DNA from: Octopus sinensis
Taxonomy: Eukaryota
DNA: 64,000 nucleotides
Assembly (NCBI RefSeq): GCF_006345805.1
Contig: NC_043006.1
Coordinates: forward strand, 34,348,001-34,412,000
Reading direction: 5' to 3'
Shown here: positions 7,312 through 61,665 of the stretch, piece after piece
Layout of the letters: the number at the start of each line of letters is the position of its first letter
Numbering within the stretch: the first letter of the stretch is position 1
The notes under the pieces: generated by a model
The model's input: the letters and a program-made list of their open reading frames with translations, nothing else
Database searches by the model: none
What the model was told of the DNA's origin: nothing
Program-made: the position numbers and the translations under genes

Positions 7312-7841
<530 letters not shown>

Positions 7842-7854
7842 TTATATATACATT

Positions 7855-8382: not shown

Positions 8383-8571
8383 ATACTTAACATAAATCTT
8401 AAAGCAAAACCAACATGATACACTGATAGAGGAGAGTCCATCCGACAGACTTCCCGTACAACTTTCCCATACTTGTCCTGGCCTGGAGGTTGTTGGGCTG
8501 GGCTGGTCTGTGAGGTGACAGGATGACTTAAGGAATGAAAATATGTTTCTTGGGCTGCGTTGTAGAAGTAA
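8383..8571 (-). CDS. Candidate internal exon of the host gene (189 nt, two open frames)
   Basis: Non-repetitive, GC-richer island on the minus strand, bounded by GTTGTTCAG| (acceptor, weak pyrimidine tract) and TAT|GTAAGT (donor). Length is divisible by 3. Product not recognised. Confidence 0.3.
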
Positions 8572-8674: not shown

Positions 8675-8718
<44 letters not shown>

Positions 8719-9140: not shown

Positions 9141-9600
9141 CTCTACCAAACCACTCCCAAAGCAAATTAAAACAATAAATTAATGAACGAAAAACAAAAC
9201 TGTCCCCCAAAATTATAACTTAACCCTATACATGTAAAAGAGGACAATTAAGTCATTTATGCATTTATTTATCGGCACCATCTGTCTGGTTGTCTGGTAG
9301 GTAAAAATGCACACCAAACAGATTTTATAGAGGACCAGAAATCAAATTCTTGAATGTAATATGGTTTTTGTACTTATTTAAAATGAAAGTATGAAAATAA
9401 CCCTTAAGATAAGGAGTTATCGTTTGTTTCTTACTCACATGGCACACACATTCATGCAACCCTTTTTTGCCATTTAAGGATTAATTATTAAAGTAAGTGC
9501 TGACACTTAATGTGACAAACATTGTAACTTTAATTGGTCAAACCTACAATTAATTACAAAAAGACAAAGGTAATGTCGTTCTAAAAAGGTTGTTGTTTAG

Positions 9601-12600
9601 CACCAAAGAGGCCCTGTTGTCCCAGACAATATGCACTGAGGAGGCCCTGTTGTCCCAGACAATATGCACTGAGGAGGCCCTGTTGTCCCAGACAATGTGC
9701 ATCAAGGAGGCCCTGTTGTACCAGACAATATGCACTGAGGAGGCCCTGTTGTACTAGACAATGTGCATCAAGGAGGCCCTGTTGTACCAGACAATATGCA
9801 CTGAGGAGGCCCTGTTGTACCAGACAATGTGCATCAAGGAGGCCCTGTTGTACCAGACAATATGCACTGAGGAGGCCCTGTTGTCCCAGACAATGTGCAT
9901 CAAGGAGGCCCTGTTGTACCAGACAATATGCACTGAGGAGGCCCTGTTGTACCAGACAATGTGCATCAAGGAGGCCCTGTTGTACCAGACAATGTGCATC
10001 AAGGAGGCCCTGTTGTCCCAGACAATGTGCACTGAGGAGGCCCTGTTGTACCAGACAATGTGCATCAAGGAGGCCCTGTTGTACCAGACAATGTGCATCA
10101 AGGAGGCCCTGTTGTACCAGACAATGTGCATCAAGGAGGCCCTGTTGTACCAGACAATGTGCATCAAGGAGGCCCTGTTGTACCAGACAATATGCATCAA
10201 GGAAGCCCTGTTGTCCCAGACAATGTGCACCAAGGAGGCCCTGTTGTCCCAGACAATGTGCATCAAGGAGGCCCTGTTGTACCAGACAATGTGCACCAAG
10301 GAGGCCCTGTTGTACCAGACAATGTGCACCAAGGAGGCCCTGTTGTACCAGACAATGTGCACCAAGGAGGCCCTGTTGTACCAGACAATGTGCATCAAGG
10401 AGGCCCTGTTGTACCAGACAATGTGCACCAAGGAGGCCCTGTTGTACCAGACAATATGCACCGAGGAGGCCCTGTTGTACCAGACAATGTGCATCAAGGA
10501 GGCCCTGTTGTCCCAGACAATGTGCATCAAGGAGGCCCTGTTGTACCAGACAATGTGCACCAAGGAGGCCCTGTTGTACCAGACAATGTGCACCAAGGAG
10601 GCCCTGTTGTACCAGACAATATGCACCAAAGAGGCCCTGTTGTCCCAGACAATGTGCATCAAGGAGGCCCTGTTGTACCAGACAATGTGCACCAAGGAGG
10701 CCCTGTTGTACCAGACAATGTGCATCAAGGAGGCCCTGTTGTACCAGACAATGTGCATCAAGGAGGCCCTGTTGTACCAGACAATGTGCACCAAGGAGGC
10801 CCTGTTGTACCAGACAATGTGCACCAAGGAGGCCCTGTTGTACCAGACAATGTGCATCAAGGAGGCCCTGTTGTACCAGACAATGTGCACCAAGGAGGCC
10901 CTGTTGTACCAGACAATATGCACCGAGGAGGCCCTGTTGTACCAGACAATGTGCATCAAGGAGGCCCTGTTGTACCAGACAATGTGCATCAAGGAGGCCC
11001 TGTTGTCCCAGACAATGTGCACCAAGGAGGCCCTGTTGTACCAGACAATGTGCATCAAGGAGGCCCTGTTGTACCAGACAATGTGCACCAAAGAGGCCCT
11101 GTTGTCCCAGACAATGTGCATCAAGGAGGCCCTGTTGTACCAGACAATATGCACTGAGGAGGCCCTGTTGTACTAGACAATGTGCATCAAGGAGGCCCTG
11201 TTGTACCAGACAATGTGCACCAAAGAGGCCCTGTTGTCCCAGACAATGTGCATCAAGGAGGCCCTGTTGTACCAGACAATGTGCACCAAGGAGGCCCTGT
11301 TGTACCAGACAATGTGCATCAATGAGGCCCTGTTGTACCAGACAATGTGCACCAAGGAGGCCCTGTTGTACCAGACAATGTGCATCAAGGAGGCCCTGTT
11401 GTATCAGACAATGTGCACCAAGGAGGCCCTGTTGTCCCAGACAATGTGCATCAAGGAGGCCCTGTTGTCCCAGACAATGTGCACCAAGGAGGCCCTGTTG
11501 TACCAGACAATGTGCACCAAGGAGGCCCTGTTGTACCAGACAATGTGCACCAAGGAGGCCCTGTTGTACCAGACAATGTGCATCAAGGAGGCCCTGTTGT
11601 ACCAGACAATGTGCACCAAGGAGGCCCTGTTGTACCAGACAATATGCACTGAGGAGGCCCTGTTGTACTAGACAATGTGCATCAAGGAGGCCTGTGTACC
11701 AGACAATGTGCATCAAGGAGGCCCTGTTGTACCAGACAATGTGCACCAAGGAGGCCCTGTTGTACCAGACAATGTGCACCGAGGAGGCCCTGTTGTACCA
11801 GACAATGTGCATCAAGGAGGCCCTGTTGTACCAGACAATGTGCACCAAGGAGGCCCTGTTGTACAAGACAATGTGCACCAAGAAGGCCCTGTTGTATCAG
11901 ACAATGTGCATCAAGGAGGCCCTGTTTTACCAGACAATGTGCACCAAGGAGGCCCTGTTGTACCAGACAATGTGCACCAAGGAGGCCCTGTTGTACCAGA
12001 CAATGTGCATCAAGGAGGCCCTGTTGTATCAGACAATGTGCACCAAGGAGGCCCTGTTGTCCCAGACAATGTGCATCAAGGAGGCCCTGTTGTCCCAGAC
12101 AATGTGCATCAAGGAGGCCCTGTTGTACCAGACAATGTGCACCAAGGAGGCCCTGTTGTCCCAGACAATGTGCATCAAGGAGGCCCTGTTGTACCAGACA
12201 ATGTGCACCAAGGAGGCCCTGTTGTACCAGACAATGTGCATCAAGGAGGCCCTGTTGTCCCAGACAATGTACACCAAGGAGGCCCTGTTGTCCCAGACAA
12301 TGTGCATCAAGGAGGCCCTGTTGTCCCAGACAATGTGCATCAAGGAGGCCCTGTTGTATCAGACAATGTGCACCAAGGAGGCCCTGTTGTACCAGACAAT
12401 GTGCACCAGACAATATGCACTGAGGAGGCCCTGTTGTACTAGACAATGTGCATCAAGGAGGCCCTGTTGTACCAGACAATGTGCATCAAGGAGGCCCTGT
12501 TGTACCAGACAATGTGCACCAAGGAGGCCCTGTTGTACCAGACAATGTGCATCAAGGAGGCCCTGTTGTACCAGACAATGTGCACCAAAGAGGCCCTGTT

Positions 12601-15600
12601 GTCCCAGACAATGTGCATCAAGGAGGCCCTGTTGTACCAGACAATATGCACTGAGGAGGCCCTGTTGTACTAGACAATGTGCATCAAGGAGGCCCTGTTG
12701 TCCGACAATGTGCATCAAGGAGGCCCTGTTGTACCAGACAATGTGCACCAAGGAGCCCTGTTGTACCAGACAATGTGCACCAAGGAGGCCCTGTTGTACC
12801 AGACAATATGCACCAAAGAGGCCCTGTTGTCCCAGACAATGTGCATCAAGGAGGCCCTGTTGTACCAGACAATGTGCACCAAGGAGGCCCTGTTGTACCA
12901 GACAATGTGCATCAAGGAGGCCCTGTTGTACCAGACAATGTGCACCAAGGAGGCCCTGTTGTACCAGACAATGTGCATCAAGGAGGCCCTGTTGTACCAG
13001 ACAATGTGCACCAAGGAGGCCCTGTTGTACCAGACAATGTGCACCAAGGAGGCCCTGTTGTACCAGACAATATGCACCAAAGAGGCCCTGTTGTCCCAGA
13101 CAATGTGCATCAAGGAGGCCCTGTTGTACCAGACAATGTGCACCAAGGAGGCCCTGTTGTACCAGACAATGTGCATCAAGGAGGCCCTGTTGTACCAGAC
13201 AATGTGCACCAAGGAGGCCCTGTTGTACCAGACAATGTGCGCCAAGGAGGCCCTGTTGTCCCAGACAATGTGCATCAAGGAGGCCCTGTTGTCCTAGACA
13301 ATGTGCACCAAGGAGGCCCTGTTGTACCAGACAATGTGCACCAAGGAGGCCCTGTTGTACCAGACAATGTGCACCAAGGAGGCCCTGTTGTACCAGACAA
13401 TGTGCATCAAGGAGGCCCTGTTGTACCAGACAATGTGCACCAAGGAGGCCCTGTTGTACCAGACAATGTGCACCAAGGAGGCCCTGTTGTACCAGACAAT
13501 ATGCACTGAGGAGGCCCTGTTGTACTAGACAATGTGCATCAAGGAGGCCCTGTTGTACCAGACAATGTGCATCAAGGAGGCCCTGTTGTACCAGACAATG
13601 TGCACCAAGGAGGCCCTGTTGTACCAGACAATGTGCACCAAGGAGGCCCTGTTGTACCAGACAATATGCACCAAAGAGGCCCTGTTGTCCCAGACAATGT
13701 GCATCAAGGAGGCCCTGTTGTATCAGACAATGTGCACCAAGGAGGCCCTGTTGTCCCAGACAATGTGCATCAAGGAGGCCCTGTTGTCCCAGACAATGTG
13801 CATCAAGGAGGCCCTGTTGTCCCAGACAATGTGCATCAAGGAGGCCCTGTTGTCCCAGACAATGTGCATCAAGGAGGCCTGTTGTACCAGACAATGTGCA
13901 CCAAGGAGGCCCTGTTGTCCCAGACAATGTGCATCAATGAGGCCCTGTTGTACCAGACAATGTGCACCAAGGAGGCCCTGTTGTCCCAGACAATGTGCAT
14001 CAAGGAGGCCCTGTTGTACCAGACAATATGCACCAAGGAGGCCCTGTTGTACCAGATAATGTGCATCAAGGAGGCCCTGTTGTACCAGACAATGTGCACC
14101 AAGGAGGCCCTGTTGTCCCAGACAATGTGCACCAAGGAGGCCCTGTTGTACCAGACAATGTGCACCAAGGAGGCCCTGTTGTACCAGACAATGTGCATCA
14201 AGGAGGCCCTGTTGTACCAGACAATGTGCACCAAGGAGGCCTGTTGTACCAGACAATGTGCACCAAGGAGGCCCTGTGTACCAGACAATGTGCACCAAGG
14301 AGGCCCTGTTGTACCAGACAATGTGCATCAAGGAGGCCCTGTTGTACCAGACAATGTGCACCAAAGAGGCCCTGTTGTCCCAGACAATGTGCATCAAGGA
14401 GGCCCTGTTGTACCAGACAATATGCACTGAGGAGGCCCTGTTGTACTAGACAATGTGCATCAAGGAGGCCCTGTTGTACCAGACAATGTGCATCAAGGAG
14501 GCCCTGTTGTACAGACAATGTGCACCAAGGAGGCCTGTTGTCCCAGACAATGTGCATCAAGGAGGCCCTGTTGTATCAGACAATGTGCACCAAGGAGGCC
14601 CTGTTGTCCCAGACAATGTGCATCAAGGAGGCCCTGTTGTCCCAGACAATGTGCATCAAGGAGGCCCTGTTGTATCAGACAATGTGCACCAAGAGGCCCT
14701 GTTGTCCCAGACAATGTGCATCAAGGAGGCCCTGTTGTATCAGACAATGTGCACCAAGGAGGCCCTGTTGTCCCAGACAATGTGCATCAAGGAGGCCCTG
14801 TTGTCCCAGACAATGTGCATCAAGGAGGCCCTGTTGTCCCAGACAATGTGCATCAAGGAGGCCCTGTTGTCCCAGACAATGTGCATCAAGGAGGCCCTGT
14901 TGTACCAGACAATGTGCACCAAGGAGGCCCTGTTGTCCCAGACAATGTGCATCAATGAGGCCCTGTTGTACCAGACAATGTGCACCAAGGAGCCCTGTTG
15001 TCCCAGACAATGTGCATCAAGGAGGCCCTGTTGTACCAGACAATATGCACCAAGGAGGCCCTGTTGTACCAGATAATGTGCATCAAGGAGGCCCTGTTTT
15101 ACCAGACAATGTGCACCAAGGAGGCCCTGTTGTCCCAGACAATGTGCACCAAGGAGGCCCTGTTGTACCAGACAATGTGCACCAAGGAGGCCCTGTTGTA
15201 CCAGACAATGTGCATCAAGGAGGCCCTGTTGTACCAGACAATGTGCACCAAGGAGGCCCTGTTGTACCAGACAATGTGCACCAAGGAGGCCCTGTTGTAC
15301 CAGACAATGTGCACCAAGGAGGCCCTGTTGTACCAGACAATGTGCATCAAGGAGGCCCTGTTGTACCAGACAATGTGCACCAAAGAGGCCCTGTTGTCCC
15401 AGACAATGTGCATCAAGGAGGCCCTGTTGTACCAGACAATATGCACTGAGGAGGCCCTGTTGTACTAGACAATGTGCATCAAGGAGGCCCTGTTGTACCA
15501 GACAATGTGCATCAAGGAGGCCCTGTTGTACCAGACAATGTGCACCAAGGAGGCCCTGTTGTCCCAGACAATGTGCATCAAGGAGGCCCTGTTGTATCAG

Positions 15601-15874
15601 ACAATGTGCACCAAGGAGGCCCTGTTGTCCCAGACAATGTGCATCAAGGAGGCCCTGTTGTCCCAGACAATGTGCATCAAGGAGGCCCTGTTGTATCAGA
15701 CAATGTGCACCAAGGAGGCCCTGTTGTCCCAGACAATGTGCATCAAGGAGGCCCTGTTGTACCAGACAATGTGCACCAAGGAGGCCCTGTTGTCCCAGAC
15801 AATGTGCACCAAGGAGGCCCTGTTGTCCCAGACAATGTGCATCAAGGAGGCCCTGTTGTATCAGACAATGTGCA
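9601..15874. repeat. 33-bp minisatellite array, about 190 units
   Basis: Unit GGAGGCCCTGTTGT(A/C)CCAGACAATGTGCA(T/C)CAA repeated head to tail with no unique spacers. It generates all the long ORFs listed between 9550 and 15984. Confidence 0.98.
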
Positions 15875-16557
15875 GAATACAGATATGGAATCAAGATACA
15901 AACACTTTGACTCTAACTTCAACTGCTGACTCCTCCATTTATAGTACCACTGGTTCTGACTCCAGCTCCCCTGTTTATTATTAGACTAATCACATGCTTC
16001 TTATACAGACTGAAAGCACACAACATACAAAGCCAATGTGAACCATCAGGCTAGATTTTAGCTGTGTTGTTGTCGCTTTTATTTTATATTATTTTTTAAA
16101 GTTACAAACAATTACACTTGAGATAAAACTTTAAATTTAAAAACAAACTTGATAAAAATCAAAAGACTATAAAGTAAAAAGATAAGGAAATAGACCATAA
16201 AAATACCACAAACAAATAAAAATACCCTCAGAAATGTCTTTGTTTACCAGATCAAGAAGATAAAGTCCATCCAAGCTGAATCTAAAAGCTAGAACACCTA
16301 AAGCAATCTAATAAAAACTATTGTCTGTGAAATTAGTCAAATTAGTATCTGTGAATGAAATTGGAAATGTTTGCGTGGCATATTACATTTTACATTTAGT
16401 CAAAGTTAAGAGTTGATACACGTTTACAGACTCCAATTCCAGTAACCCAATAACTACGACTAACTCTGATTCTACAGACCATCAGGTAGGCTGAGAGTAT
16501 CTTACTTTTTTTGTCAGCGAGAATGAATTTGAAATAATAATATTTAATACAGTGAAG

Positions 16558-18981: not shown

Positions 18982-19378
18982 AGGCACAGGAGTGGCTGTG
19001 TGGTAAATAGCTTGCTTGCCAATCACATGGTTCCAGCTTCAGTCCCACTGCGTGGCACCTTGGGCAAGTGTCTTCTGCTATAGCCTCGGGTCGACCAAAG
19101 CCTTGTGAGTAGATTTGATAGATGGAAACTGAAAGAAGCCCATCATATTTATATGTGTGTGTGTGTGCATATGTTTGTGTGTCTGTGTTTGTACCCCCAC
19201 CATCGCTTGACAACCGATGTTGGTGTGTTTACGTCCCCATAACTTAGCGGCTTGGCAAAAGCAACAAATAGAATAAATACTAGGCTTACAAAGAATAAGT
19301 CTAGTGGTCAATTTGTTCGACTAAAGGCAGCGCCCCAGCATGACTGCAGTCAAATGACTGAAACAAGTAAAAGAATAA
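18982..19378 (+). mobile_element. Family A SINE
   Basis: Full head, Meta-like block and tail. Confidence 0.85.
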
Positions 19379-19480: not shown

Positions 19481-19771
19481 GCTCTGATTGGAAGTGTTAA
19501 TATGTTCATGTTTTGTCTTGGTATAAAAGATGGGCTACAGTAAATATTCTGCTCAATACCACTGATTTGTTTGTCAGTTGTTTGACCTTAACCACTGGAG
19601 CATGTTCCTTGGTGGGTGATGATATGTGCATCTTTGGTCACGAGCAGTAGGTTGAGGAGCATCATAGCCATGTGCTTGATCTGACAACATACAACCTCAA
19701 GAAATGCCACTAAGCATTTTCTCTAGTGCAGTAGTGATTCTATCAACTCACAAGACTACCATATCTTACTA

Positions 19772-21080
19772 CAGGGTGGGGCAGAGAGGACGGACGTTTT
19801 TGAAAAATTCACAAGATCATTAATTTTACCTGCAAACATTTTACTGACATCAATGTGTTCGTATCGAATTAGTAATTGTCAAAACCAAATGTGGAAAACA
19901 ACATCCATCATGTGGTGTCCGTTTTCATTGATGCATTTCTGAAAGTGTTCTTGGAAATTGGTCTCCATTCTCTCCAGCATAGCTCTGTCGATTTGGGCAA
20001 CTTCCATGTGAACAGCTTCCTTCACATCATCCAACATATGGCACTTATGCACATACACATTTGCCTTGAGGTTTCCCCTCGAGAAATAACCACACATGGG
20101 CAAATTAGGGGACTGAGGGGGCCAAGGAATGTCAGCAAACCTGGAAATGAGGTGGTCACTAAAGAGAGGGCAAAGAACATCCCTTGATGTTCTGGCTGTG
20201 TGGGCCCCATCCTGATGAAACCACACACGTCGAATAGGCATAAGTTTCTGTCGTAATTCAGGCACAAAGAAGTTGTTTATTATCACGATGTAATGCTCTG
20301 AATTCATAGTAACAGCATTTCCATTATTGTCTTCAAAAAAGTAAGGACCAATGACAGCAGCTTTTCCAACAGTCCACCAGACCATCACTTCTGGGCTGAG
20401 CAGCGGTCCTTCGTGCAGTTCTCTCGGATTTTCAAGAACCCAATAACGACAGTTCTTTTGATTCACCATGCCATTGAGATGAAAATGAGTTTCATCACGC
20501 ATTAACAAAATGAGGTTGTCATCTGCCTCAAAAATTGCTTCCATCTGACCTGTAAAGTTATGCATGGTCTCATGGTTTCAACTGTTACCCAATGGGTGGA
20601 AATGCAGGTCATCATGGCAAAATATGCCTTACAGATTGATTACCAATGACAAGTTCAGTGGAATGGCTCCGAGCAGAGCAATTCGGACTTCGCATCAAAG
20701 CTTGTTTGATCTGACGTGTTCCACATTTTCCAAGATGTGCACCGTCTGTAGTGCCTCCATCAGTCTTTTATTTATTACCTCATGTACAAAGTGCATTCAT
20801 CCAACGTAAGATTGTGTTACAAGTGGGAACAGCCTGATTTCGGTGAATGTTGAAGTGGCGCCTAAACTCACGCTGAATTGCTGTGACAGACTTGTTATTC
20901 TTCATGAAACTGTCATAGGTAAACAAACGATGCTCTATCATACACAGTGTCATGGCTTCACCTGAAAAGAAAAAATGCTAAGACACCACAGACTGAATGG
21001 TACCTCTCAGACATATGTCCCTCCCCCTGGAGCTGAGTAATGGCCATTTCAAAAACGTCCATCGTCTCTTCCCCAACCTG
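19772..21080 (-). mobile_element. Full-length Tc1/mariner transposon of the maT (DD37D) type, 1309 bp
   Basis: About 34-bp TIRs CAGGGTGGGGCAGAGAGGACGGACGTTTTTGAAA / TTTCAAAAACGTCCATCGTCTCTTCCCCAACCTG (4 mismatches), each flanked by TA. Confidence 0.9.
19879..20953 (-). pseudogene. Disrupted maT/mariner transposase
   Basis: N-terminus MTLCMIEHRLFTYDSFMKNNKSVTAIQREFRRHFNIHRNQAVPTCNTILRW* resembles the DUF4817 HTH. Catalytic part contains RDETHFHLNG, NCRYW, IGPYFFE, WFHQDGA, WPPQSPNL and LKANVY. An in-frame stop and frameshift separate the parts, and the third catalytic D appears mutated. Confidence 0.9.
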
Positions 21081-29619: not shown

Positions 29620-29660
29620 AATAGACAGACAGACAGACAGATAGAGAGAGAGAGAGAAAA

Positions 29661-29709
<49 letters not shown>

Positions 29710-29710
29710 G

Positions 29711-29776
<66 letters not shown>

Positions 29777-29795
29777 CCAGATAGATAGATAGCCG
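29620..29795. repeat. Compound (GACA)n/(GA)n/(GATA)n microsatellite
   Basis: Directly visible tetranucleotide runs. Confidence 0.95.
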
Positions 29796-30370: not shown

Positions 30371-31231
30371 CAAACAGGAGACCCCCTTCGGTCATGAATG
30401 ACCATGGGATTGCACCTAGAAAGTTACCCTCCCAGGCACAAGTCCAGGCAAGGTTGTTTGTGGAAGGCCAGCAGTCGCCCATGCATACCAGCCTCCCCTC
30501 TCCACACCACATGTTATCCAAGAGAAAGGCAAAGGGGCCGATACAGCTTGGCACCAGTGATGTCGCAATTCATTTCTACAGCTAAGTGAACTGGAGCAAC
30601 AAAAAATAAAGTGTCTTGTTCAAGAACACAACATGCAGCCCAGTCCAGGAACTGAACTCACAACCTCATGATCGTAAGCTTGATGCTCTAACCACTGAGC
30701 CATGCACCTTCAAACAACAACTTGAATATATCTGATTTTGATAGGAAGACTAAGATTCGCCTCCTCTCTATATGGCATCTATCCCAGTTTGACAGAAAAA
30801 CATTTCGCGTGCATGAAGCCAGCAGCTTGCAGCAGATTGTATTTTAATGATTATCATGAAATCGACCAAATATGCACTTACACCGCTTTTGAAAGTCAGC
30901 TCTTCACATAAGATTCCAATTGTAACCAGGTATTCTTTCAGCTTATTTGTGTTCCATTGTTTATGCACACATCACACATGTAGCATTACACATGTAATAG
31001 AGCATGTACCCCACCCCATTTCTTTCCACCTGTCATACATCTTCTGCTGCATTCAATGCTTGTATTTCACTCACATGTAGTATAACACTTGATGCACAAG
31101 AATCACAGAGGTAAATACTTCCGATGTGTGTGTGTGAGTAAGTAAGTATAAACATGAATGCGAATGTAGACGCAACACAGACACACATGTGTGTATAAGA
31201 GTGAAAGAGACAGGCCATTATATTTGCTTAC

Positions 31232-31320
31232 CTTCAGTTTTCCATGCAGTTAAGAATTAATCAATGTAATGAACACTTACCTGAAAAATAAAGAGAATAA
31301 CAAATAAAGATTAAGAGAGA
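31232..31320 (-). other. Candidate recursive splice site (AG|GTAAGT) with 49-nt cryptic exon
   Basis: Minus strand TCTCTCTTAATCTTTATTTGTTATTCTCTTTATTTTTCAG|GTAAGT, with a second donor GAAG|GTAAGC 49 nt downstream. All three frames of the 49 nt contain stops. Confidence 0.55.
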
Positions 31321-32321
31321 TTCAAAGATTTATCAAATCATATATAAACATAGGAATTAGGCAGAATTCAACAAATGAATTGAATAATGGTTGTATGTAA
31401 GAAATAGCATAATGTGTTGGGATGGCTGTGTGGTTAAAGAGTTCACTTTGCAATTGGTGTTCTTGTATTTGGTCTGTCTGTGCTGTACCTTCAACATTTG
31501 TCCTCTAGCATAGCTTGGAGTTGACTAAAGCCTCATGATTGAAACACGATAGATAGAAACTGTGCCAGTCAGATGTAGATACACGTCTATCCAATTAGCA
31601 TATTAAAAAAGGCAGCTTTGTTATACATGTTTAAAATACATGTGGTGCTTTGGTGGGAAAAGTGTTTTCTACTATAGCCCTCGGCCAGCTGAAGCTGTCT
31701 GAGTGGATTTGGTAAATGGAAAGTGAAAGATGCCCAATGTGTGTGTATGTGCATATGCATGTGTGATAGTCATAAAACAAATGTCATCATCAGGTAAATG
31801 GTGTTCTTCATTTCCAACTTTTCTTGGAAACAGGTCTGGTCATTGGATGGGGGGGGGGGGATATTACCTTACCTGGAAACAGGTGAGGGTTGGTGACAGG
31901 AAGGGCATCCAGTTGTAGCAAACCCACCCAAGCAAATTCCAGTTGACCCATGCAGTCATGGAAAAGATGTTAAAACGACGATGATAAAGATTGTGATGAT
32001 GATATTAACAGACGAGGTTCTCTGTATGTAGTTATTATGTAAGAGCAGTCAGCAAACATGTTAATCCCTTTGACATCCACAGTAGATGAGCCCTCATTCA
32101 GTTAATAGGAATTGACTTGTAGCCCAAAATGTTGGACAGGGCCATCTCAGACAACAGTCAGTTATTGTCAAGTGAATGAGTGCAGCAGAATTTTTCTCTG
32201 CTGATGCATGTTTTCTAACTGAACTCACACAATAAATAATTTAAACTATGTCTGGAAATGAAAGTTATTTTTTGCCATTCTTTCTCACTAATCCATTTTC
32301 TTTTCTTTTTTTTTTTTTTAT

Positions 32322-33379: not shown

Positions 33380-33428
33380 CAATATATATGTGTATATAAA
33401 TACATACATACATACATATATATATATA

Positions 33429-33461
<33 letters not shown>

Positions 33462-33629
33462 ATACATATATATAATATATAATACATACATATATAATAT
33501 ATATATATACATAATATATATATATTATATATATACACATATATATATATATATTATATACATACATATTATATATATATATACATACATATATATATAA
33601 TATATATACATACATATATATATATATAT

Positions 33630-33680
<51 letters not shown>

Positions 33681-33751
33681 ATATATACATACATATATAT
33701 ATATACATACATACATAATATATATATATATATACATACACATACATATAT

Positions 33752-33784
<33 letters not shown>

Positions 33785-34012
33785 CATACATATATATATA
33801 TATATATATACATACATATATATATATATATACCTACATATATATACATACATATACATACATATATATATATATATACATACATATAATATATACATAC
33901 ATATTATATATATATACATATATATATACATATACATATATATATATACATAATATATATATACATACTATATATATACATACATATATATATATATACA
34001 TACATATATAAT

Positions 34013-34043
<31 letters not shown>

Positions 34044-34092
34044 TATACATACATATATATATATCTATATATATATATATCATACATATATA

Positions 34093-34126
<34 letters not shown>

Positions 34127-34142
34127 ATATATATATACATAC

Positions 34143-34173
<31 letters not shown>

Positions 34174-34342
34174 TATATATATATATATATTATATACATA
34201 CATATATATATTATATATACATACATATATATATATATATATCTATATATATATATACTACATAATATATATATATCTACATACATATATATACATATAC
34301 ATATATATATACATACATATATTATATACATACATATATATA

Positions 34343-34384
<42 letters not shown>

Positions 34385-34449
34385 CATATATATATATATA
34401 CATACATATATATATATACATACATAATATATATATATATTATATATAT

Positions 34450-34488
<39 letters not shown>

Positions 34489-34501
34489 TATACATACATA
34501 T

Positions 34502-34560
<59 letters not shown>
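33380..34560. repeat. About 1.2-kb mosaic (TA)n/(TACA)n microsatellite
   Basis: Almost pure T/A/C alternation. It is the source of the IYIY-type ORFs. Confidence 0.97.
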
Positions 34561-34561
<1 letters not shown>

Positions 34562-42896: not shown

Positions 42897-43200
42897 TCAA
42901 AAAGTAATGCCATTTTGTTTAGGACAGTTATAATTACCAACACAGGAACAGGTATCATACATCAAAATGAAGCTGGTCCTCTGTGGATCACATCTCCACT
43001 TCTCAACATAGTCACCATTTCTCTCAATAGCAATGTTCTGCCTTTGAATGAGAGCATGTATCCTTGCCCCGTAAAATTCTGTTTTCTTCACTACAGTTTT
43101 CACTTCCTCGTCACTGGAATAATGTTTGCCTCTCAAACTGTCTTTCACGGGGCCCGAAGAGATGATAGTCCATTGACGAGGAAGTGAAAACTTCCTAAGG
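42897..43200 (-). pseudogene. Mariner (DD34D-type) transposase C-terminal fragment
   Basis: KDSLRGKHYSSDEEVKTVV...FYGARIHALIQRQNIAIERNGDYVEK matches the mariner ending LRG-F-S-EEVK...FY-GI-L-RW-C-GDYVEK. Confidence 0.8.
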
Positions 43201-43212
43201 TATTTTTCGATG

Positions 43213-43375
43213 TTATTATTATTATTATTATTCAGGTCACTGCCTGGAATCGAACTTGGAATCTTGGTGTTAGTAGCCTGTGCTCTTAACCACAGTGGTT
43301 AAGAGTGTGGGCTACTAACCCCAAGATTCCGAGTTCGAGTCCAGTCAGTAACCTGAATGATAATAATAATAATAA
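43213..43375. repeat. Palindrome made of two head-to-head tRNA-like SINE fragments
   Basis: 81-bp arms centred on 43294. The right arm GTGGTTAAGAG...CTACTAACCCCAAGATTCCGAGTTCGAGTCC has a tRNA-like A-box end and a B-box. Confidence 0.85.
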
Positions 43376-45385: not shown

Positions 45386-46364
45386 ATATTAATACATAGT
45401 CTACAGAGGCATGCATTTTCTCCAAGACTTCTCCTTCCTATCCACCTCTCTTTAGATTAAAACAATGAATGGCTAACCTTCATGTCAAACTTTCACATGT
45501 AAGAGAGTTAAGCCAGCTGTAGGACGTCTGGTTAAGTTGGCAGCTTAGCAAAGGTAAAGAAACCTTACAGAGAACAGAATGTGTGTGTGTGTGTTTGTGT
45601 GAGGTGGAGGGCAGTGGGCAGGTGAATTACATAGCTACTGACTGACATAATCAGATTAAGAAAGGCTAATATTGACTCATAGCCAGTATGAGGAGGTCAC
45701 TTGACCTTCTACTTTAAGCAATAAGCAAATACTACTACTACTATGACTACTACTTCTACCATCACTACCACTACTACTACTAACAACAACAACAGTGAAA
45801 ATATCCTCATAATTATAGTAATAATTTCTTAGGTTGGCTGAAAGCCAGACATTTGTAAGGGGTGCATCTAACCAATTAAATCAATCCTAGTGAAATACTG
45901 AATGGATTTACACTAGTAAATCCATGGACCCTGAAAGTATGAAAGTGAAATTGACTGTGGCAGGATTTGAACTCAGAACACAACTACATAGATGTTTAAA
46001 TAGGCTGCTGTAACATTTATGCTATCCTCCTCCTCCTCTGCTGCCGCCACCACCACCAGTCTCTTTTTCTACTGGGACATATCCTACTCTTTGGAAATAT
46101 GCTTCAGCCTGTCCCATTCCCAAGAAAGGCTACTCTTATAACCCTTCTCTCACACTCACTTCGAATATCTCAAAGATAATTCAAATAACTACAAACAGCA
46201 ACCTTTGACAACCAGACTATACATCTATGTACATGGGTTTTAGGTATGTATGTATGTATGTATGCATGTATGTGTGTATGTATGTATATATGTATGTATG
46301 TATGCATGTATGTATGTATGTATGTATGCATGTGTGTATGTGCATGTGTATGTATGTATATATT

Positions 46365-47254: not shown

Positions 47255-47657
47255 CTCTCTTTACTCTTTTACTTGTTTCAGTCATTTGACTGCGGCCATG
47301 CTGGAGCACCGCCTTTAGTCGAGCAAATCGACCCCGGGATTTATTTTTTGTAAGCCCAGTACTTATTCTATTGGTCTCTTTTGCTGAATCGCTAAGTGAC
47401 GGAGACGTAAACACACCAGCATCGGTTGTCAAGCAATGCTAGGGGGACAAACACACACACAAACACACACATACATATATATACATATATACGACAGGCT
47501 TCTTTCAGTTTCCGTCTACCAAATCCACTCACAAGGCATTGGTCGGCCCGGGGCTATAGCAGAAGACACTTGCCCAAGATGCCATGCAGTGGGACTGAAC
47601 CCGGAACCATGTGGTTAGCTAGCAAGCTACTTAACACACAGCCACTCCTGCGCCTAT
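47255..47657 (-). mobile_element. Family A SINE
   Basis: Full-length, CpG-retaining copy. Confidence 0.85.
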
Positions 47658-48094
47658 ATTGGAGATAATGAAAGTGAAACACTAATTTTTGATTGCGTTC
47701 TCTACTCACTGCGAATGAAGTAATCTTAATGAGTGGATTAACAGCCAATAGTAGAGTTTATAGGGCTGTTCGAAATGCTAGAAAAAATAGCCAAATCTTC
47801 CTCAAGTCATCCTAAAATCTTTAAAAATAAAGACAGAACACACAAACAATGATGTTGTTGATATACGAACAGGATGGAGTGTCTTCGATTACAAGCTTGA
47901 CCCGGAGTTGAACAAATTCAGGTAAAATATCGGGCCAATAGCGCAGCATCTATGCAGTCACGCGACTTTCTAGAAATGGCAGACAAATCTCTCCAAACCT
48001 TACCTTGCCTTCTGAAAAATGAAAGGTACGTTCGAAATTGCAGTGTTGTGTTTGTATGTGCAAATAGGCAAGTATAAATAATCTAGATTTTATT

Positions 48095-48127
<33 letters not shown>

Positions 48128-48428
48128 GTGGCACGTAAAAAGCACCATCTGATCGTGGCCGTTGCCAGCCTCGCCTGGCCCCCGTGCCGGTGGCACGTAA
48201 AAAGCACCATCCGATCGTGGCCGTTTGCCAGCCTTGTCTGGCACCTGTGCCGGTGGCACGTAAAAAGCACCCACTATACTCACGGAGTGGTTGGTGTTAG
48301 GAAGGGCATCCAGCCGTAGAAACATTGCCAGATCAGACTGGGCCTGGTGCAGCCTTCTGGCTTCCCAGACCCCAGTTGAACCGTCCAACCCATGCTAGCA
48401 TGGAAAACGGACGCTAAACGATGATGAT
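48128..48428 (+). mobile_element. Family C SINE with internal ~62-bp tandem units
   Basis: GTGGCACGTAAAAAGCACC occurs three times, followed by GGTGTTAGGAAGGGCATCCAGCCGTAGAAAC and tail GGAAAACGGACGCTAAACGATGATG. Confidence 0.85.
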
Positions 48429-48744
48429 ATATATATATATATATATAGTGAGAGAAGACACAACTCTCTTCGCAACGGCATGTGGACCGTTAAGCGAAAA
48501 TAGTTGACCGAAAAAGAACAGATCAAATACCTGCACGAATTAACAATTGACTGTATTATATGCAAATAGCAAAATAAGCTTATATTGTTGTGCTTAATTG
48601 GAATATTATAATTTGGGTGTGCGCCTGTCTCATGCCTACAATCTAAAAACATTTGTTGGCATTGTATAACACAATTTAATAATGTAAAATTATTTGAATA
48701 AAACCTAACACGATTTTTCTTTGATATAAAAAGGAAAAAAAAAA

Positions 48745-49108
48745 GGCTGTATGGTAAGAAGCTTGCTTACCAACCACATGGTTCCAAGTTCAATCTCACT
48801 GCATGGCACCTTGAGCAAGTGTCTTCTATTATATAGCCTTGGGTTGACCAAAGCCTTGTGAGTGGATTTGGTAGATGGAAACTGAAAGATGCCCGTCTTA
48901 TATATGTGCGTTGCCCCCACCACCACCATCGCTTGACAACCGATGTTGGTGAGTTTACGTCCCCGTAACCTAGCGGTTCGCCAAAAGATAACGATAGAAT
49001 TAAGTACCAGGCTTCCAAAGAATGAGTCCTGGCATCGATTTATTCGACTAAAGGCGGTGCTCCAGCATGGCCGCAGTCAAATGACTGAAACAATTAAAAG
49101 AGTAAAAG
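48745..49108 (+). mobile_element. Family A SINE
   Basis: Head, Meta-like block and tail AAAAGAGTAAAAGAA. Confidence 0.8.
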
Positions 49109-49539
49109 AATATTGCAGAATTGTAAGTTCCTGTGTTTAAGCTAGAAATCCGAAGAAATTTTAGAAAAGAAAAAAAAATTATAAAACAACAAAAAATTAC
49201 GGCTGTGTATGCTTCATTCCGAAACTTTTCCCGCTCAGCCGTCTAACTGGCTGCATATCGGTAAATGCAAAACAGAACCATGTGTGGCAGCAGTGATATG
49301 GTACAGAAATGTTTGGGTTAAAACGTGCTAATTTCCACTTATTCTGTGCGTTTATCTTGGAAATAGATACACCTCCAGATTTGTTGACAATTAGCTCTAA
49401 ACGAACTGCTGCTGCTGTTGTTGTTGTCGTCTAGCCTTGATCGAGTAAACAAACCTATGACCAAAAACATTTCAGCTGAGCAGACAACTACGTAATGTAA
49501 TGTTCTCTTTTTTTTTTTTTAAGGAACAGAAAAAAAAAG

Positions 49540-50030
49540 GGATCTTTTCGGTTTGAACGGCAGTTTTTAACATAATTTCTAGGTAACTAAAAAATATGCC
49601 GTTTCTCTTCTTTACAAAAAGTGGATCTTTTCGGTTTGAACGGCAGTTTTGTAAAATAGTTTCCACGTAACTAAACACTTTTAAACTTCGTATACTGGTA
49701 GAATGTGTTTACAAAACATCTTTTTCTCTTGGCTTTATTGAGAAAATTCTATGGTTTGTAAGATATTTGTTGCTGTTTTTCCTTAAATTTCTGCAATTTC
49801 AACCAATCAATGACGTGTATTGAGGTAAAAAACATTCTGTGCCGTATGAATATGTCCCTCGTTTAAGAAACAGATTGGGTTTATTTACATTTGTGAAGAA
49901 AAAAAGATACACTTCCCCCTAACCCTAAAACAGATTGAAATGCAATAGATCGATACTAGGGTCATAATTATGGGTGACAATTTCATATGACACCGCTAGA
50001 AAGAAACTGCCGTTCAAACCGAAAAGATCC
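49540..50030. mobile_element. Second member of the GG-terminal, 8-bp-TSD family, with a duplicated left end
   Basis: 27-bp TIR GGATCTTTTCGGTTTGAACGGCAGTTT at 49540 and again at 49623, with AAACTGCCGTTCAAACCGAAAAGATCC ending at 50030. TSD AAAAAAAG at 49532-49539 and 50031-50038. Confidence 0.85.
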
Positions 50031-51171
50031 AAAAAAAGAAAAGAAGAGAAGAAACAGGGGGTATGATTAGAGAGTGAGAGAGATTTGGCTGCTCTTTTTA
50101 GCAAGTCGAATGACCACATACAACAGGAGTTCCTAACGTGCTTTGTTCCATTCCAGTCAACGGTTTGAAACTCACTTTACCCTCAACTTGTTTTGTTCCT
50201 TAATTTAAGTCCACATTTATTTCTACACCGTAAAACACACAAACCGAGATTAAAAATTTTAAAATAGTATCTTTTAACATTATTCACTTCAAATAAGTGA
50301 CAATCGCACATAACACTGTTATTTAACTTATTTATGAACAGATGTCAGGAAGGAACACTAAAAAAATTGGCCGAGGAGCTTTGGTTTTCCATAAAATAAG
50401 ACCACATCAAAATCTCAGCAATAAAACGTTTTAACTGAAGAATGGAAATTCCTGACATAGCGGTGAGCTTAGTGGTGATCTTGTAACCATGGGTTGTGGA
50501 ACTGAAACTTGAAAACAGCACCAGCCTCACCATTCCTACGTTAGATAATAGAGCCAATGTTTTGTTATGGGGTGGAGAGAGCTTGTTCGGGAATCTCCCT
50601 CATCTACCACCCTAGCACGATTATTAGTTATCAGTGTTATTTCTGTCATTTGTCAGACACATCGCAAATACCCCCCCCCCATGCCAACAGAAGGCGAAGA
50701 AGTACAGGAGAAGAAAAAAGAAAAGAAGGCGAAGACGACGGCGAGTGCTGTCATCATCACCGCCGCCCCCATCATACAAACAACATCCACCTCTCATATT
50801 TCCCGTCTGAGTCACGACAATATAAACTACCAACGCAAACTTACCAATTCTAGTGACCAATCCTTCTTTATATAAGAGGATGTAGCCAAGTAAAATTATG
50901 TAAGAAATTTTTTTTTACTAACAACGATTATATTTTTTCTTAAATAAATATTATATTTTTTTTTCCAGTATATCTACCAAGCTAAAATATAAAAACAGTA
51001 GCGGGATTAAAAAAAAAAATCTTAATAGTTCCGAAATATTCTTAGCTCCTTGCATCTGGTTGAGATTTGCCAGTTTAAACTTTAGGACTTGAGGTACCGG
51101 CACCTCGAGTGGTCGCTTGGGGCATCACCTCATGTACTTGGCATCTTCCAAATACAGAAGGAAAAGATGTA

Positions 51172-51406
51172 TTGGGTTGGTGCATAATTTTTGCGGCTTT
51201 TTTTTTTCTACAAATTTTATTCAACAAAAAAAAATAACAATATTTAACAAAAAATCATTAAATGACGGTCTGCCAAGCAAATGGGAAGTAGATGGTGAAT
51301 ATGCTTCGGAATAAACATTTAAAGATATTTTTGTTACATGTTATGATAGTTTTTGTTAAATAAAATTTGTTGAAATTAAAGCCGCAATTATTATGCACCA
51401 ACCCAA
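51172..51406 (+). mobile_element. Internally deleted mariner (MITE)
   Basis: TA-TTGGGTTGGTGCATAAT ... ATTATGCACCAACCCAA-TA. Internal DGLPSKWEVDGEYASE* resembles a mariner transposase C-terminus. Confidence 0.85.
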
Positions 51407-52250
51407 TAAAAATAATGAAGTGAAATAAAAAGAAAGTCCCTTCACGGGATTGTTGCGTAGGCGATATAAACGGATGCGATCTCTCGTCTAATCTGGATAT
51501 AGCAAAATAAGTATTTCCAGGAAACGTAATGCTTACGATAGAAAGCCGTCAAGAGCCATCAGTCATACGTTATAGGATGTCGCACTACATCAATGATCTT
51601 CATTTAGAAACAATACTTTCGATACCTTATATGATCGCGAAAGAGTAAAGATTATTACGTAAGCTAAAGTTTATAGAAATCATATCTATGCTCGTTTATG
51701 ACGTAAAGTATTAAATTCTTTGGCAATTTTGTCAATAGAAAATTATATTGTATGAATAAAGGTATGAAAACATTTAAAGTCGAGTAAAATGTTTTAGGAT
51801 AGTGTTATGTTATTTAGCATCTATTCTTTGATTCTTTGGTTAACATTCTTTAATTTATTATTTTAAAAAATCGTTCTCCAGATCAACAGCGAACCATTCG
51901 GACCTTCTCTGACCAACCTATCCTCCACTCAACGTTAATTTGTTGTAAAAACGCACTAAAATCATTGCCTGTCGGTATGGTCTCTCTCTTTGCCTTAGTA
52001 TTTTTCGGGGAGGGTCATATTTTGGCACAAGGTCAGCCTTCCATAGTTATATTAAGGAATTTTAAATGTTTATGCTGTATTTGAACTGTTGACTTTAGAT
52101 TACATATCGTAATAAACACTATTCCAACAGCTGCACTTCATCCACCTTGTGAAATTTTTTTAAAGGTTACACTTAAGGATGGCCAAGTTCTTGAGCTTAT
52201 CGAGAGCGCGGGCTCTGAACTGCTCTTTCTTTTTAAACACGGAAGACATA

Positions 52251-52457
52251 CCTACACAAGTGTGCCCACCCTGTTACAACTTCGTTTCCTCATAACTTTT
52301 AGAAAAATAGGTATTTTTTAATAAAATTTTCTTACAAATACCTTTCAGCTGCCGTAGATTACAATTCTATAAATATCAATTAAAGGAATTTGAAGAAAAT
52401 TTCATTAAAAGCTATGAGGAAACAAAAGTCGCAGGGGTGGGGGAATACTTGTGTAGG
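52251..52457. mobile_element. TA-flanked MITE (Tc1/mariner-like)
   Basis: Imperfect ~55-bp TIRs CCTACACAAGT...GTTTCCTCATAACTTTTA / TAAAAGCTATGAGGAAAC...ACTTGTGTAGG, with TA on both sides. Confidence 0.75.
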
Positions 52458-53732
52458 TATACCAAATAAGTTGTCGTTTTAAAACAGCAAGGATACAGTG
52501 GATATAAGTTCTTGCTAAAAAAAAAAAGACAAAAAGAAAGACTATCCACAGCTTTAATTTCTTTTATAATCAGGGCGGATCTGGCGCTAAACAGCATCAA
52601 CACACAATTGATTCTATTTCATTGCACTTGAAAAGTGCAAGTACCGACGGAGAGTAGACAGACCATTATCTCTACACTGCAGGTCGGACACTATCAATAG
52701 TTATCTCTAGACATTGTAAAGATACCACGGTACACGATAACATTATGTACTCGTACAATTACACGGAATAAAACAAACCTTGAAACTTGAAAATCGCCAA
52801 TTGCTTTAAAAAGATTCTAAAATAGCTTATCAGAAAATATTACAGGTCTTCAGAAAACAGAACGTTCACACACACACTGCAATCGAATGTTTGAACTCTG
52901 ATCAACAGCAGATGTATTACGTATAACTTATGAAATATGCACGTTAAACCTAACTATCGTTCTTATCTTCAAATCTATTCACTCGTGGAGGTGGTGGCGG
53001 TTGCTAATGTTGTCGTGGTTCCTGTTTCCGTTCCGTGCTCTACAACACACCTGTATATCTATCCTATGGCAGTTCCAATAATATAACATTTTCTAAGGAA
53101 AGGTTTCTGGGTCTCGCCCAACCCTTCTCTATGTCTGGTGAGAGAGAGAGAGAGATTTCACTTCTTTACGACCCCGAATGGATGAAAGGCAATTAGCATC
53201 GGAGGGATTTGAATTCAGGAAACTGAAACAAATCCTGCGAGTCATCCTCCGTCAATTTGCCAATTCTGATTCCTGAATAACCAAAAATAAACAACGCTCG
53301 TGTCAACCCACCTTCGTCCTCTGCATGTTTTCTGTATTACCAGTGAGGCACAGAACATACTTCTCAGGCGACCATGCAGAATACATGACACTCATTGCCA
53401 ATTTCTTTTTCCAGCCACCAGATTAACCCGCTACTCAACGTGGTCGTGTAGGAGAAACTTTTGAAAATGCTTCAGACAAGTTGAGGGTTAAAAAAATATG
53501 ATGTAAATATTCTTTTGTTGATGTTTACCTCTACACATGAGCATAACAGTTCCCTGAATTATCCTCTTATTGTACAGGAACCTAACTAAACCTCACAAAG
53601 AATTTAATTTGATGCTATGCCCCACCCATTCCTTTACTTTCAGTTTCCATTTCAATCAAGAAACCTTTGTATAGTTTAATTCGAAGTAAACATCATTCTC
53701 ATGAAATAACCCCGCCTCACCATGGTCTGGGA

Positions 53733-53887
53733 CAGTGCTTCGCAACCTTTTTTTTTCACTTGCGGTGTTCACTTATATTCTTTTCAAAATTCGGCAGCAC
53801 ACCTGAACGAAAAATATAGCTAAAAGTATAGGGGAAAAAATTATATTCAAGTTACACTGTGACACACCAGTGTGCTGTGGAGCACTG
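53733..53887. mobile_element. Short hAT-like MITE
   Basis: CAGTGCTTC ... GGAGCACTG termini, with flanks GTCTGGGA / GTCTAGTA. Confidence 0.6.
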
Positions 53888-59835: not shown

Positions 59836-59874
59836 CCGTGCCCGCGATCTGGAGCTATGCCTTCGACTCGACAT
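59836..59874 (-). CDS. Candidate first coding exon of the host gene (MSSRRHSSRSRAR, phase 0)
   Basis: GGAAACATGTCG start with A at -3, 13 codons, then the strong donor CGG|GTGAGT. It sits in unique, CpG-rich sequence. Protein family not recognised. Confidence 0.45.
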
Positions 59875-61515: not shown

Positions 61516-61530
61516 TAGGGGTCAGGGGGC

Positions 61531-61599
<69 letters not shown>

Positions 61600-61665
61600 A
61601 AAAAACGTGTAGTTCGCCATGATAGATAGCTAGCCACTATACATTCTTTATTTTCTCTCTTTGTT

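What the first reader, a model, noticed from the sequence alone, without database searches (positions are those of the whole stretch)
31232..31320. Candidate recursive splice site (ratchet point) with a poison RS-exon in a giant cephalopod intron
Seen: on the minus strand, a ~35-nt pyrimidine-rich tract with a branch-like CTTAAT ends in CAG, immediately followed by a perfect donor GTAAGT. A second donor AAG|GTAAGC follows 49 nt later, and the 49-nt piece has stops in all three frames. Known: this is the architecture of recursive splice sites with cryptic RS-exons in Drosophila and vertebrate long introns. Inference: it lies about 28.5 kb downstream of the candidate first-exon donor (59835), roughly midway to the candidate exon at 8571. 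I am not aware of recursive splicing being described in molluscs.
Basis: partly seen in the sequence, partly recalled or inferred. Interest (0 to 1): 0.8.

Follow-up and report, generated by a model that had tools for sequence, protein, structure and literature searches.

The report
Candidate recursive splice site, untested
A near-perfect "splice acceptor joined to splice donor" signal with a 49-base decoy exon really is in the sequence and is rarer than chance predicts, but nothing available here could show that it is transcribed, used or conserved, so it remains a good, unproven candidate for stepwise removal of a long intron.

Summary
The described sequence is present on the minus strand. 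A 145-nt AG-free, pyrimidine-rich stretch (17 of 20 pyrimidines before the AG, branch-like CTTAAT 30 nt upstream) ends in CAG|GTAAGT at 31281/31280. A second donor, AAG|GTAAGC, follows 49 nt later, and the 49-nt piece has stops in all three frames. AGGTAAGT occurs once per strand in the window. With the pyrimidine tract, about 0.0025-0.005 such sites are expected per 64-kb strand, and roughly ten times fewer with the second donor. The site is not a repeat within the window and matches no Rfam family.

The architecture matches fly ratchet points with cryptic exons of about 50 nt. The intron context is only circumstantial. The minus strand shows T>A and G>C skews that end near 60.3 kb, next to the candidate first exon. 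Weaker acceptor|donor motifs also occur in excess on the minus strand (4 versus 0). No orthologous DNA, RNA evidence or organism identity could be obtained.

I rate a working recursive site at about 0.4 and chance or unused at about 0.38. If real, it is a new member of a known kind.

The parts
31284..31425 (-). AG-free zone ending in the polypyrimidine tract (about 31284-31320). It includes a branch-point-like CTTAAT at 31315-31310, with candidate branch A 30-31 nt upstream of the acceptor.
   Evidence: 17 of 20 pyrimidines before the AG, and a 145-nt gap between successive AG dinucleotides.
31275..31283 (-). Juxtaposed acceptor and donor, CAG|GTAAGT. The junction lies between 31281 and 31280. 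This is the candidate ratchet point.
   Evidence: only AGGTAAGT on this strand; 10 of 11 positions match the U1-complementary consensus CAGGTAAGTAT; after joining to an exon ending in CGG the regenerated donor matches 9 of 11.
31232..31280 (-). 49-nt candidate cryptic RS-exon (GTAAGTG...CTGAAG), with stops in all three frames and a frame-shifting length.
   Evidence: This is the same size class as fly cryptic RS-exons (about 50 nt, generally out of frame; PMC8605326).
31224..31234 (-). Donor of the candidate RS-exon, AAG|GTAAGC (G of GT at 31231). It is weaker than the regenerated donor.
   Evidence: 8 of 11 positions match the consensus, with mismatches at -3 and +6; it is the only GTRAG within 130 nt downstream.
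59836..59874 (-). Unconfirmed.
   Evidence: sequence; the cumulative minus-strand T-A excess peaks at 60337, just upstream; no protein in the database starts this way.
8473..8571 (-). Weak signals and no supporting evidence.
   Evidence: sequence: modest pyrimidine tract, GTATGG donor; no protein or Pfam match.

Best explanation
I think this is most likely a recursive splice site (ratchet point) with a cryptic 49-nt RS-exon inside a long intron of a minus-strand transcript.

Proposed mechanism, all of it inferred:
1. When the polymerase has passed about 31.2 kb, the strong acceptor (branch-like CTTAAT, a long AG-free pyrimidine tract, CAG) and the donor AAG|GTAAGC 49 nt downstream together define a short exon.
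2. The upstream exon is spliced to 31280, removing roughly 28 kb as a first lariat.
3. That ligation recreates a donor, xxG|GTAAGT, at the new junction. It pairs better with U1 than the GTAAGC donor does.
4. The recreated donor is therefore used for the next step, and the 49 nt are discarded with the rest of the intron, leaving no trace in the mRNA.
5. If the recreated donor loses the competition, the 49 nt are included. They carry stops in every frame and shift the frame, giving an NMD-prone or non-productive isoform.

Shown: the sequence anatomy and its rarity. Inferred: transcription of the minus strand, use of the site, and any selective value.
For: Anatomy:
- Complete consensus (Y)nNCAG|GTAAGT, unique on its strand.
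- First AG after 145 AG-free nt, with a branch-like motif at -30.
- Second donor at +49, and the piece has stops in all frames.
- The regenerated donor pairs with U1 better than the RS-exon donor: 9 versus 8 of 11 consensus matches, and an uninterrupted run of 9 positions if the G at -2 is allowed to pair as a G-U wobble versus 7 (the runs are my reading of its match strings). This is the ordering that gives skipping in flies (PMC8605326).

Rarity:
- Expected 0.0025-0.005 per 64-kb strand, and about ten times less with the second donor.
- Not a repeat copy in the window, and no inverted repeats around it.
- No Rfam family, so it is not a U1-like gene read on the opposite strand.

Context:
- After masking repeats, the minus strand has T>A (+3.9%) and G>C (+3.5%). 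The skew is positive in 22 and 21 of 29 2-kb bins (Wilcoxon p = 0.009 and 0.016). Sense strands of mammalian introns show this sign (my knowledge: Touchon 2003, Green 2003).
- The T-A excess accumulates up to 60337 and then reverses, beside the candidate first exon.
- CpG o/e switches at about 48 kb.
- Relaxed acceptor|donor motifs: 4 on the minus strand (0.72 expected, P = 0.013) and 0 on the plus strand.

Literature:
- Fly RS-exons are about 50 nt, out of frame and poorly conserved.
Against: - There is no direct evidence of transcription, of junction or lariat reads, or of conservation. None could be obtained.
- The only proposed flanking exons are unsupported: no protein match and no Pfam match, and exon 2 has weak splice signals.
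- The strand-skew rule has not been validated for this organism, and the reversal beyond 60 kb rests on under 4 kb of sequence.
- In vertebrates such motifs are barely enriched in large introns (ratio 1.0-1.5). A repeat-rich, vertebrate-sized genome might behave that way.
- Genome-wide, chance alone should give tens to hundreds of sites this good.
- One of the four relaxed minus-strand motifs lies in a SINE copy.
- The organism was never confirmed.
Confidence: 0.4

Rival explanations
1. Chance juxtaposition with no role. The motif sits in untranscribed DNA or on the antisense strand of a gene. Alternatively it is transcribed but ignored or used only as splicing noise.
For: A 2-3 Gb genome should hold a few hundred polyY-CAG|GTAAGT sites by chance, and tens with a nearby donor (extrapolated). 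No exon, protein, RNA family or orthologue supports a gene here. The window is mostly satellite, microsatellite, SINE and transposon debris. Vertebrate large introns show almost no enrichment of such motifs.
Against: For this one window the expectation is about 0.005 or less per strand, and about 0.0003-0.0006 for the full architecture. The strand of the motif agrees with the strand favoured by the composition skews and by the weaker motifs. If the site is transcribed, an acceptor and donor this close to consensus and 49 nt apart would be hard for the spliceosome to ignore (inference).
Confidence: 0.38
2. An ordinary, regularly included 49-nt non-coding or poison cassette exon (for example a 5'-UTR exon of a transcript whose true start codon lies further downstream) that merely happens to begin with GTAAGT. 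This would be an expressed RS-exon rather than a silent ratchet point.
For: The 49 nt are flanked by a strong acceptor and a good donor, the normal exon-definition unit. Hundreds of annotated mammalian exons start with a donor-like sequence and are kept in the mRNA (PMC6224609, abstract).
Against: The regenerated donor is the stronger of the two, which predicts skipping. No protein or ORF in the database derives from a transcript containing it, though short non-coding exons would not show up there.
Confidence: 0.14
3. A relic carried in by a mobile element, or by a duplicated exon-intron boundary, present in many copies elsewhere in the genome.
For: The window is rich in interspersed repeats. 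A similar but weaker motif at 31873 lies inside a SINE copy only 600 nt away.
Against: No second copy of 30700-31650 exists in the window even at word size 9. There are no terminal inverted or direct repeats around it. There is no similarity to any protein, transposon-encoded ones included.
Confidence: 0.06

Closest known systems
Drosophila intronic ratchet points with cryptic RS-exons (Ubx, kuz, Bx; Burnette 2005, Duff 2015, Joseph 2018, Joseph & Lai 2021)
   Same: The consensus (Y)nNCAG|GTAAGT. A short cryptic exon of about 50 nt closed by a second donor, with out-of-frame, stop-containing content. The ratchet donor is stronger than the RS-exon donor. The position is tens of kb from either end of a putative intron longer than 40 kb.
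   Different: Fly sites are defined by sawtooth coverage, junction and lariat reads, and deep conservation of the acceptor|donor motif. None of these could be examined here. The host gene is unknown. The genome is repeat-rich, unlike fly introns.
Vertebrate recursive splicing through RS-exons in long neuronal genes (Sibley 2015; Blazquez 2018)
   Same: Exon definition of an RS-exon, regeneration of a 5' splice site, competition between the two donors, and a poison outcome if the RS-exon is retained (PMC6224609 abstract; summary).
   Different: Vertebrate sites are few and are not enriched as motifs (ratio 1.5 or less). Many vertebrate RS-exons are annotated, included exons. Here there is no information on expression.
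Pseudoexons or decoy exons in long introns (for example DMD)
   Same: An intronic segment flanked by good splice signals that is normally absent from the mRNA.
   Different: Ordinary pseudoexons do not begin with a consensus donor, so they cannot be removed by re-splicing.

Membership tests
Recursive splice site / ratchet point with cryptic RS-exon | Juxtaposed acceptor and donor, (Y)nNCAG|GTAAGT | tested here: met
   perfect 9-mer, 17 of 20 pyrimidines, a 145-nt AG-free zone, and the only such site in the window.
Recursive splice site / ratchet point with cryptic RS-exon | Downstream donor delimiting a short cryptic exon (about 50 nt in flies) | tested here: met
   AAG|GTAAGC at +49, the only GTRAG within 130 nt. 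Reference size from PMC8605326.
Recursive splice site / ratchet point with cryptic RS-exon | Regenerated donor stronger than the RS-exon donor, so the exon is skipped | tested here: met
   9 of 11 versus 8 of 11 matches to the U1-complementary consensus. This is a crude measure, there is no species-specific splice-site model, and it assumes the upstream exon ends in CGG.
Recursive splice site / ratchet point with cryptic RS-exon | Cryptic exon content is out of frame or carries premature stops | tested here: met
   stops in all three frames, and a length of 49 nt.
Recursive splice site / ratchet point with cryptic RS-exon | Lies on the sense strand inside a long intron | tested here: inconclusive
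   Composition skews, their turning point, and the motif asymmetry all favour minus-strand transcription from about 60 kb. No exon is confirmed, and no annotation or RNA data are available.
Recursive splice site / ratchet point with cryptic RS-exon | Evolutionary conservation of the acceptor|donor motif | not testable with these tools
   No orthologous DNA was reachable. ORFs around the site are absent from the protein collection, and the 24-mer is absent from the metagenome contigs.
Recursive splice site / ratchet point with cryptic RS-exon | Splicing intermediates: upstream-exon-to-RS junction reads, sawtooth coverage, segment lariats | not testable with these tools
Ordinary cassette or UTR exon | Present in mature transcripts | not testable with these tools
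   No transcript data. Protein-based look-ups cannot detect a 49-nt non-coding exon.
Interspersed repeat copy | Multiple similar copies, or terminal repeats | tested here: not met
   This was tested within the window only; the rest of the genome was not available.

The most novel reading that the evidence does not exclude
That would put recursive splicing in Lophotrochozoa as well as Ecdysozoa and Deuterostomia. It would argue that the mechanism is ancestral to bilaterians rather than a lineage-specific solution.
Probability: 0.3. Interest if true: 0.55.

Novelty: new member of a known kind. Interest (0 to 1): 0.35.

Why it matters
Recursive splicing has been demonstrated in insects and vertebrates, and motif enrichment has been reported for a sea urchin (PMC2773006). 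The held literature has nothing on molluscs. A validated site would extend the mechanism to a third major bilaterian branch, in animals whose genes carry very long introns. It would also give a concrete locus for asking whether such sites are selected for splicing accuracy or are tolerated accidents. On its own, one motif match is a lead and not a discovery. The value here is that the locus and the predicted junction (upstream donor to 31280) are precise enough to test with existing RNA-seq.

Tried and rejected
1. The exon 1 + exon 2 peptide (46 aa) searched against 5.8 billion proteins shared no words with any entry.
2. Orthologous or same-species contigs through spurious ORFs. Ten window ORFs looked up by exact sequence were all absent. 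A 483-aa concatenation of the seven ORFs flanking the site gave no hit at E of 1 or less.
3. A scan of the JGI metagenome contigs for the 24-mer spanning the junction gave 0 matches.
4. A U1-like or other RNA gene on the opposite strand (ACTTACCTG is the 5' end of U1). There were no Rfam matches in the window and no tRNA, so this was rejected.
5. A repeat or MITE origin was rejected within the window.
6. An ordinary donor at the end of a coding exon was rejected, because all frames close within 10-16 codons upstream.
7. SINE orientation as a clue to the transcribed strand. About six copies lie in each orientation, so this is uninformative.
8. Poly(A)-signal and donor-hexamer counts on the two strands show no clear asymmetry.
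9. Organism identification through the Tc1/mariner-like ORF. The best hits are 75% identical or less and come from unnamed metagenome or Logan contigs, so this is uninformative.
10. A Pfam scan of candidate exon ORFs and transposon-like ORFs found only a DUF4817 helix-turn-helix hit, in the transposon N-terminus. A bulk Pfam scan of all six frames was prepared and then dropped as poor value.
11. Sibley 2015 could not be opened under the PMC id I remembered.

Full report
OBSERVATION

The minus strand reads tctctCTTAATctttatttgttattctctttatttttCAG|GTAAGTgttcattacattgattaattcttaactgcatggaaaactgAAG|GTAAGCaaat. In window coordinates:
- the branch-like CTTAAT is 31315-31310
- the acceptor CAG is 31283-31281
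- the first donor GTAAGT is 31280-31275
- the 49-nt piece is 31280-31232
- the second donor GTAAGC is 31231-31226

The 49 nt carry stops in all three frames.

First, the acceptor AG is the first AG after a 145-nt AG-free run, one of only 15 gaps of 140 nt or more among 3440 on that strand, and several of those are microsatellites. Second, all three reading frames upstream close within 10-16 codons of the junction, so this is not simply the donor at the end of a sizeable coding exon.

IS IT MORE THAN CHANCE?

AGGTAAGT occurs once on each strand. The plus-strand copy at 6997 has a purine-rich upstream region. Only 26 of the 3441 AG dinucleotides on the minus strand have 17 or more pyrimidines in the preceding 20 nt, and only this one is followed by a consensus donor.

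Order-3 Markov simulations of the strand give, per 64 kb, 0.53 AGGTAAGT and 0.0025 with the pyrimidine tract. None of 400 simulations also had a GTAAG 25-105 nt downstream. An empirical product from the real sequence gives about 0.005 for motif plus tract. The second donor contributes a factor of about 0.06-0.11.

So the architecture is unexpected for one window. Scaled to a genome of a few gigabases, chance alone would still supply a few hundred motif-plus-tract sites and a few tens with a nearby donor. The statistics make this a good candidate and nothing more.

WHAT IT IS NOT

- It is not a repeat copy within the window. A BLAST search of 30500-32000 against the window at word size 9 finds only SINE-like pieces at 31656-31765 and 31882-31921, and nothing across 30700-31650.
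- No terminal inverted or direct repeats surround it.
- It is not an RNA gene on the other strand. The complement, ACTTACCTG, is the 5' end of U1 snRNA, but there are no Rfam or tRNA hits anywhere in the window.
- Translated ORFs around it match nothing in the protein database, transposon proteins included.

CONTEXT: IS IT IN AN INTRON OF A MINUS-STRAND GENE?

This is the weak point. Both can be read in the sequence. Their joined translation shares no words with any of 5.8 billion proteins, and neither has a Pfam match.

The window otherwise contains:
- a 6.3-kb 33-bp satellite at 9600-15874
- a 1.2-kb (AT)n tract
- many SINE-like copies
- a Tc1/mariner-like transposase remnant at 19768-20953

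No convincing coding exon was seen on either strand.

Three indirect observations all point to the minus strand being transcribed from about 60 kb downwards:
1. After masking tandem and simple repeats, the minus strand has T>A by 3.9% and G>C by 3.5%. The skew is positive in 22 and 21 of 29 2-kb bins (Wilcoxon p = 0.009 and 0.016). The sense strand of mammalian introns shows this sign and size. That comparison comes from my knowledge of Touchon 2003 and Green 2003 and has not been validated for this organism.
2. The cumulative T-minus-A excess rises almost steadily from position 1 to 60337 and then falls. The turning point is just upstream of the candidate first exon, although under 4 kb lies beyond it.
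3. Relaxed acceptor|donor juxtapositions (13 or more of 20 pyrimidines, then AG|GTRAG) number 4 on the minus strand, at 54293, 48004, 31873 and 31281, against 0.72 expected (P = 0.013). The plus strand has 0 against 0.46 expected. The site at 31873 lies in a SINE copy, and only 31281 has a downstream donor.

In addition, CpG observed/expected jumps from 0.14-0.54 (1-48 kb) to 0.73-1.18 (48-64 kb). That pattern would fit a methylated gene body adjoining an unmethylated 5' region, but it has other readings too.

I put the chance that the site lies in a minus-strand intron at roughly 0.6.

HOW IT WOULD WORK

Everything in this section is inferred from the anatomy.

If the site is transcribed, a near-consensus acceptor and a good donor 49 nt apart form a normal exon-definition unit. 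Splicing of the upstream exon to 31280 would remove about 28 kb and recreate a donor, xxG|GTAAGT, at the junction.

If the G at -2 is counted as a G-U wobble, the paired run is an uninterrupted 9 positions. The RS-exon donor AAG|GTAAGC matches 8 of 11, with an uninterrupted run of 7 (the run lengths are my reading of its match strings).

In flies, the stronger of the two donors decides the outcome, and a stronger ratchet donor gives complete skipping of the cryptic exon (PMC8605326). The prediction is therefore silent two-step removal of the intron. Occasional inclusion of a 49-nt frame-shifting, stop-bearing exon would be the failure mode.

COMPARISON WITH WHAT IS KNOWN

Fly ratchet points share the following features (PMC8605326):
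- the consensus (Y)nNCAG|GTAAGT
- location in long introns
- an ultraconserved acceptor|donor motif

Pai et al. found 539 candidate sites in 379 fly introns, common in introns over 40 kb (PMC6110457).

Shepard et al. counted RP-site motifs per 100 kb of large intron against the complementary strand (PMC2773006):

| Species | Sense strand | Complement | Ratio |
|---|---|---|---|
| Fruit fly | 2.2 | 0.10 | 21.7 |
| Beetle | 0.81 | 0.10 | 8.0 |
| Sea urchin | 0.54 | 0.066 | 8.2 |
| Bee | 0.48 | 0.12 | 4.0 |
| Eight vertebrates | - | - | 0.9-1.5 |

No mollusc was included. Searches of the held literature for recursive splicing together with cephalopod or mollusc terms returned only incidental co-mentions.

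Four defining features of the family are met here: the motif, the short RS-exon, the donor hierarchy and the poison content. One is inconclusive (a sense-strand long intron). Two could not be tested (conservation and splicing intermediates).

WEIGHING

If the animal resembles the non-vertebrate species, a motif this strict in a sense-strand large intron is far more likely to be selected than accidental. If it resembles vertebrates, the odds are about even. Independently of selection, signals this strong would probably be used if they are transcribed.

Against that, transcription is unproven, the flanking exons are unsupported, and the organism itself was never confirmed by any tool.

My estimates are:
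- working recursive site with a normally skipped RS-exon: 0.40
- chance or unused: 0.38
- ordinary included exon that happens to start with GTAAGT: 0.14
- repeat-borne relic: 0.06

VERDICT

If real, this is a new member of a known kind, extending the mechanism to a new phylum. It is not a new mechanism.

Interest is moderate (0.35). A specialist would not be greatly surprised. What the candidate offers is a precise prediction that existing RNA-seq, a multi-species alignment and a sense/antisense motif census could each settle quickly.

Noticed in passing
window 9600-15874: A 6.3-kb tandem satellite with a 33-bp unit (GCACCAAGGAGGCCCTGTTGTACCAGACAATGT), about 190 copies at 92-93% identity, and a higher-order 66/99-bp periodicity. 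GC is 0.53 against about 0.38 around it, and it is almost free of CpG (5 CpG across 10001-16000). It produces long spurious ORFs in all six frames.
   Followed up: partly
window about 48000 (boundary); 1-48000 versus 48001-64000: A sharp change in CpG observed/expected: 0.14-0.54 in the lower 48 kb and 0.73-1.18 in the upper 16 kb. This may be a border between historically methylated and unmethylated DNA.
   Followed up: partly
window 1-64000, turning point at about 60337: The minus strand carries a steady T>A and G>C excess after repeat masking. The T-A excess stops accumulating at about 60.3 kb, next to the candidate first exon at 59874-59836.
   Followed up: yes
window 54293, 48004, 31873 (minus strand): Three weaker acceptor|donor juxtapositions, all on the minus strand...cctttttaAG|GTGAGG at 54293...catttttcagAAGGCAAG|GTAAGG at 48004, where an acceptor is followed 8 nt later by a donor; and ...cctgtttccAG|GTAAGG at 31873, inside a SINE copy. 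None has a second donor within 130 nt.
   Followed up: partly
window 19768-20953 (minus strand): A remnant of a Tc1/mariner-like transposase. It has a 228-aa ORF plus an upstream DUF4817 helix-turn-helix piece, and is about 63% identical by tblastn to a 364-aa protein known only from unnamed metagenome and Logan contigs. A second ORF at 42900-43298 (minus strand) looks by eye like a mariner C-terminus, but it has no Pfam hit.
   Followed up: partly
window 33382-34561: An imperfect (AT)n microsatellite of about 1.2 kb. There are further microsatellites at 7727-7850 (TA), 8677-8716 (GA, directly upstream of candidate exon 2), 29621-29792 (ATAG) and 46244-46363 (GTAT).
   Followed up: no
window, for example 31660-31765, 19066-19181, 47466-47571, 3834-3937: A SINE-like interspersed repeat with at least 12 copies at 70-85% identity, in both orientations in about equal numbers. 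It gives recurrent pseudo-peptides such as ...[10 protein letters not shown]....
   Followed up: partly
window 59476-60280 (minus strand): Three of the longest AG-free runs on the minus strand (195, 169 and 210 nt) cluster around the candidate first exon. The region also holds a CT-rich stretch and a TATA-like CTATATAAAT about 170 nt upstream of the ATG.
   Followed up: no
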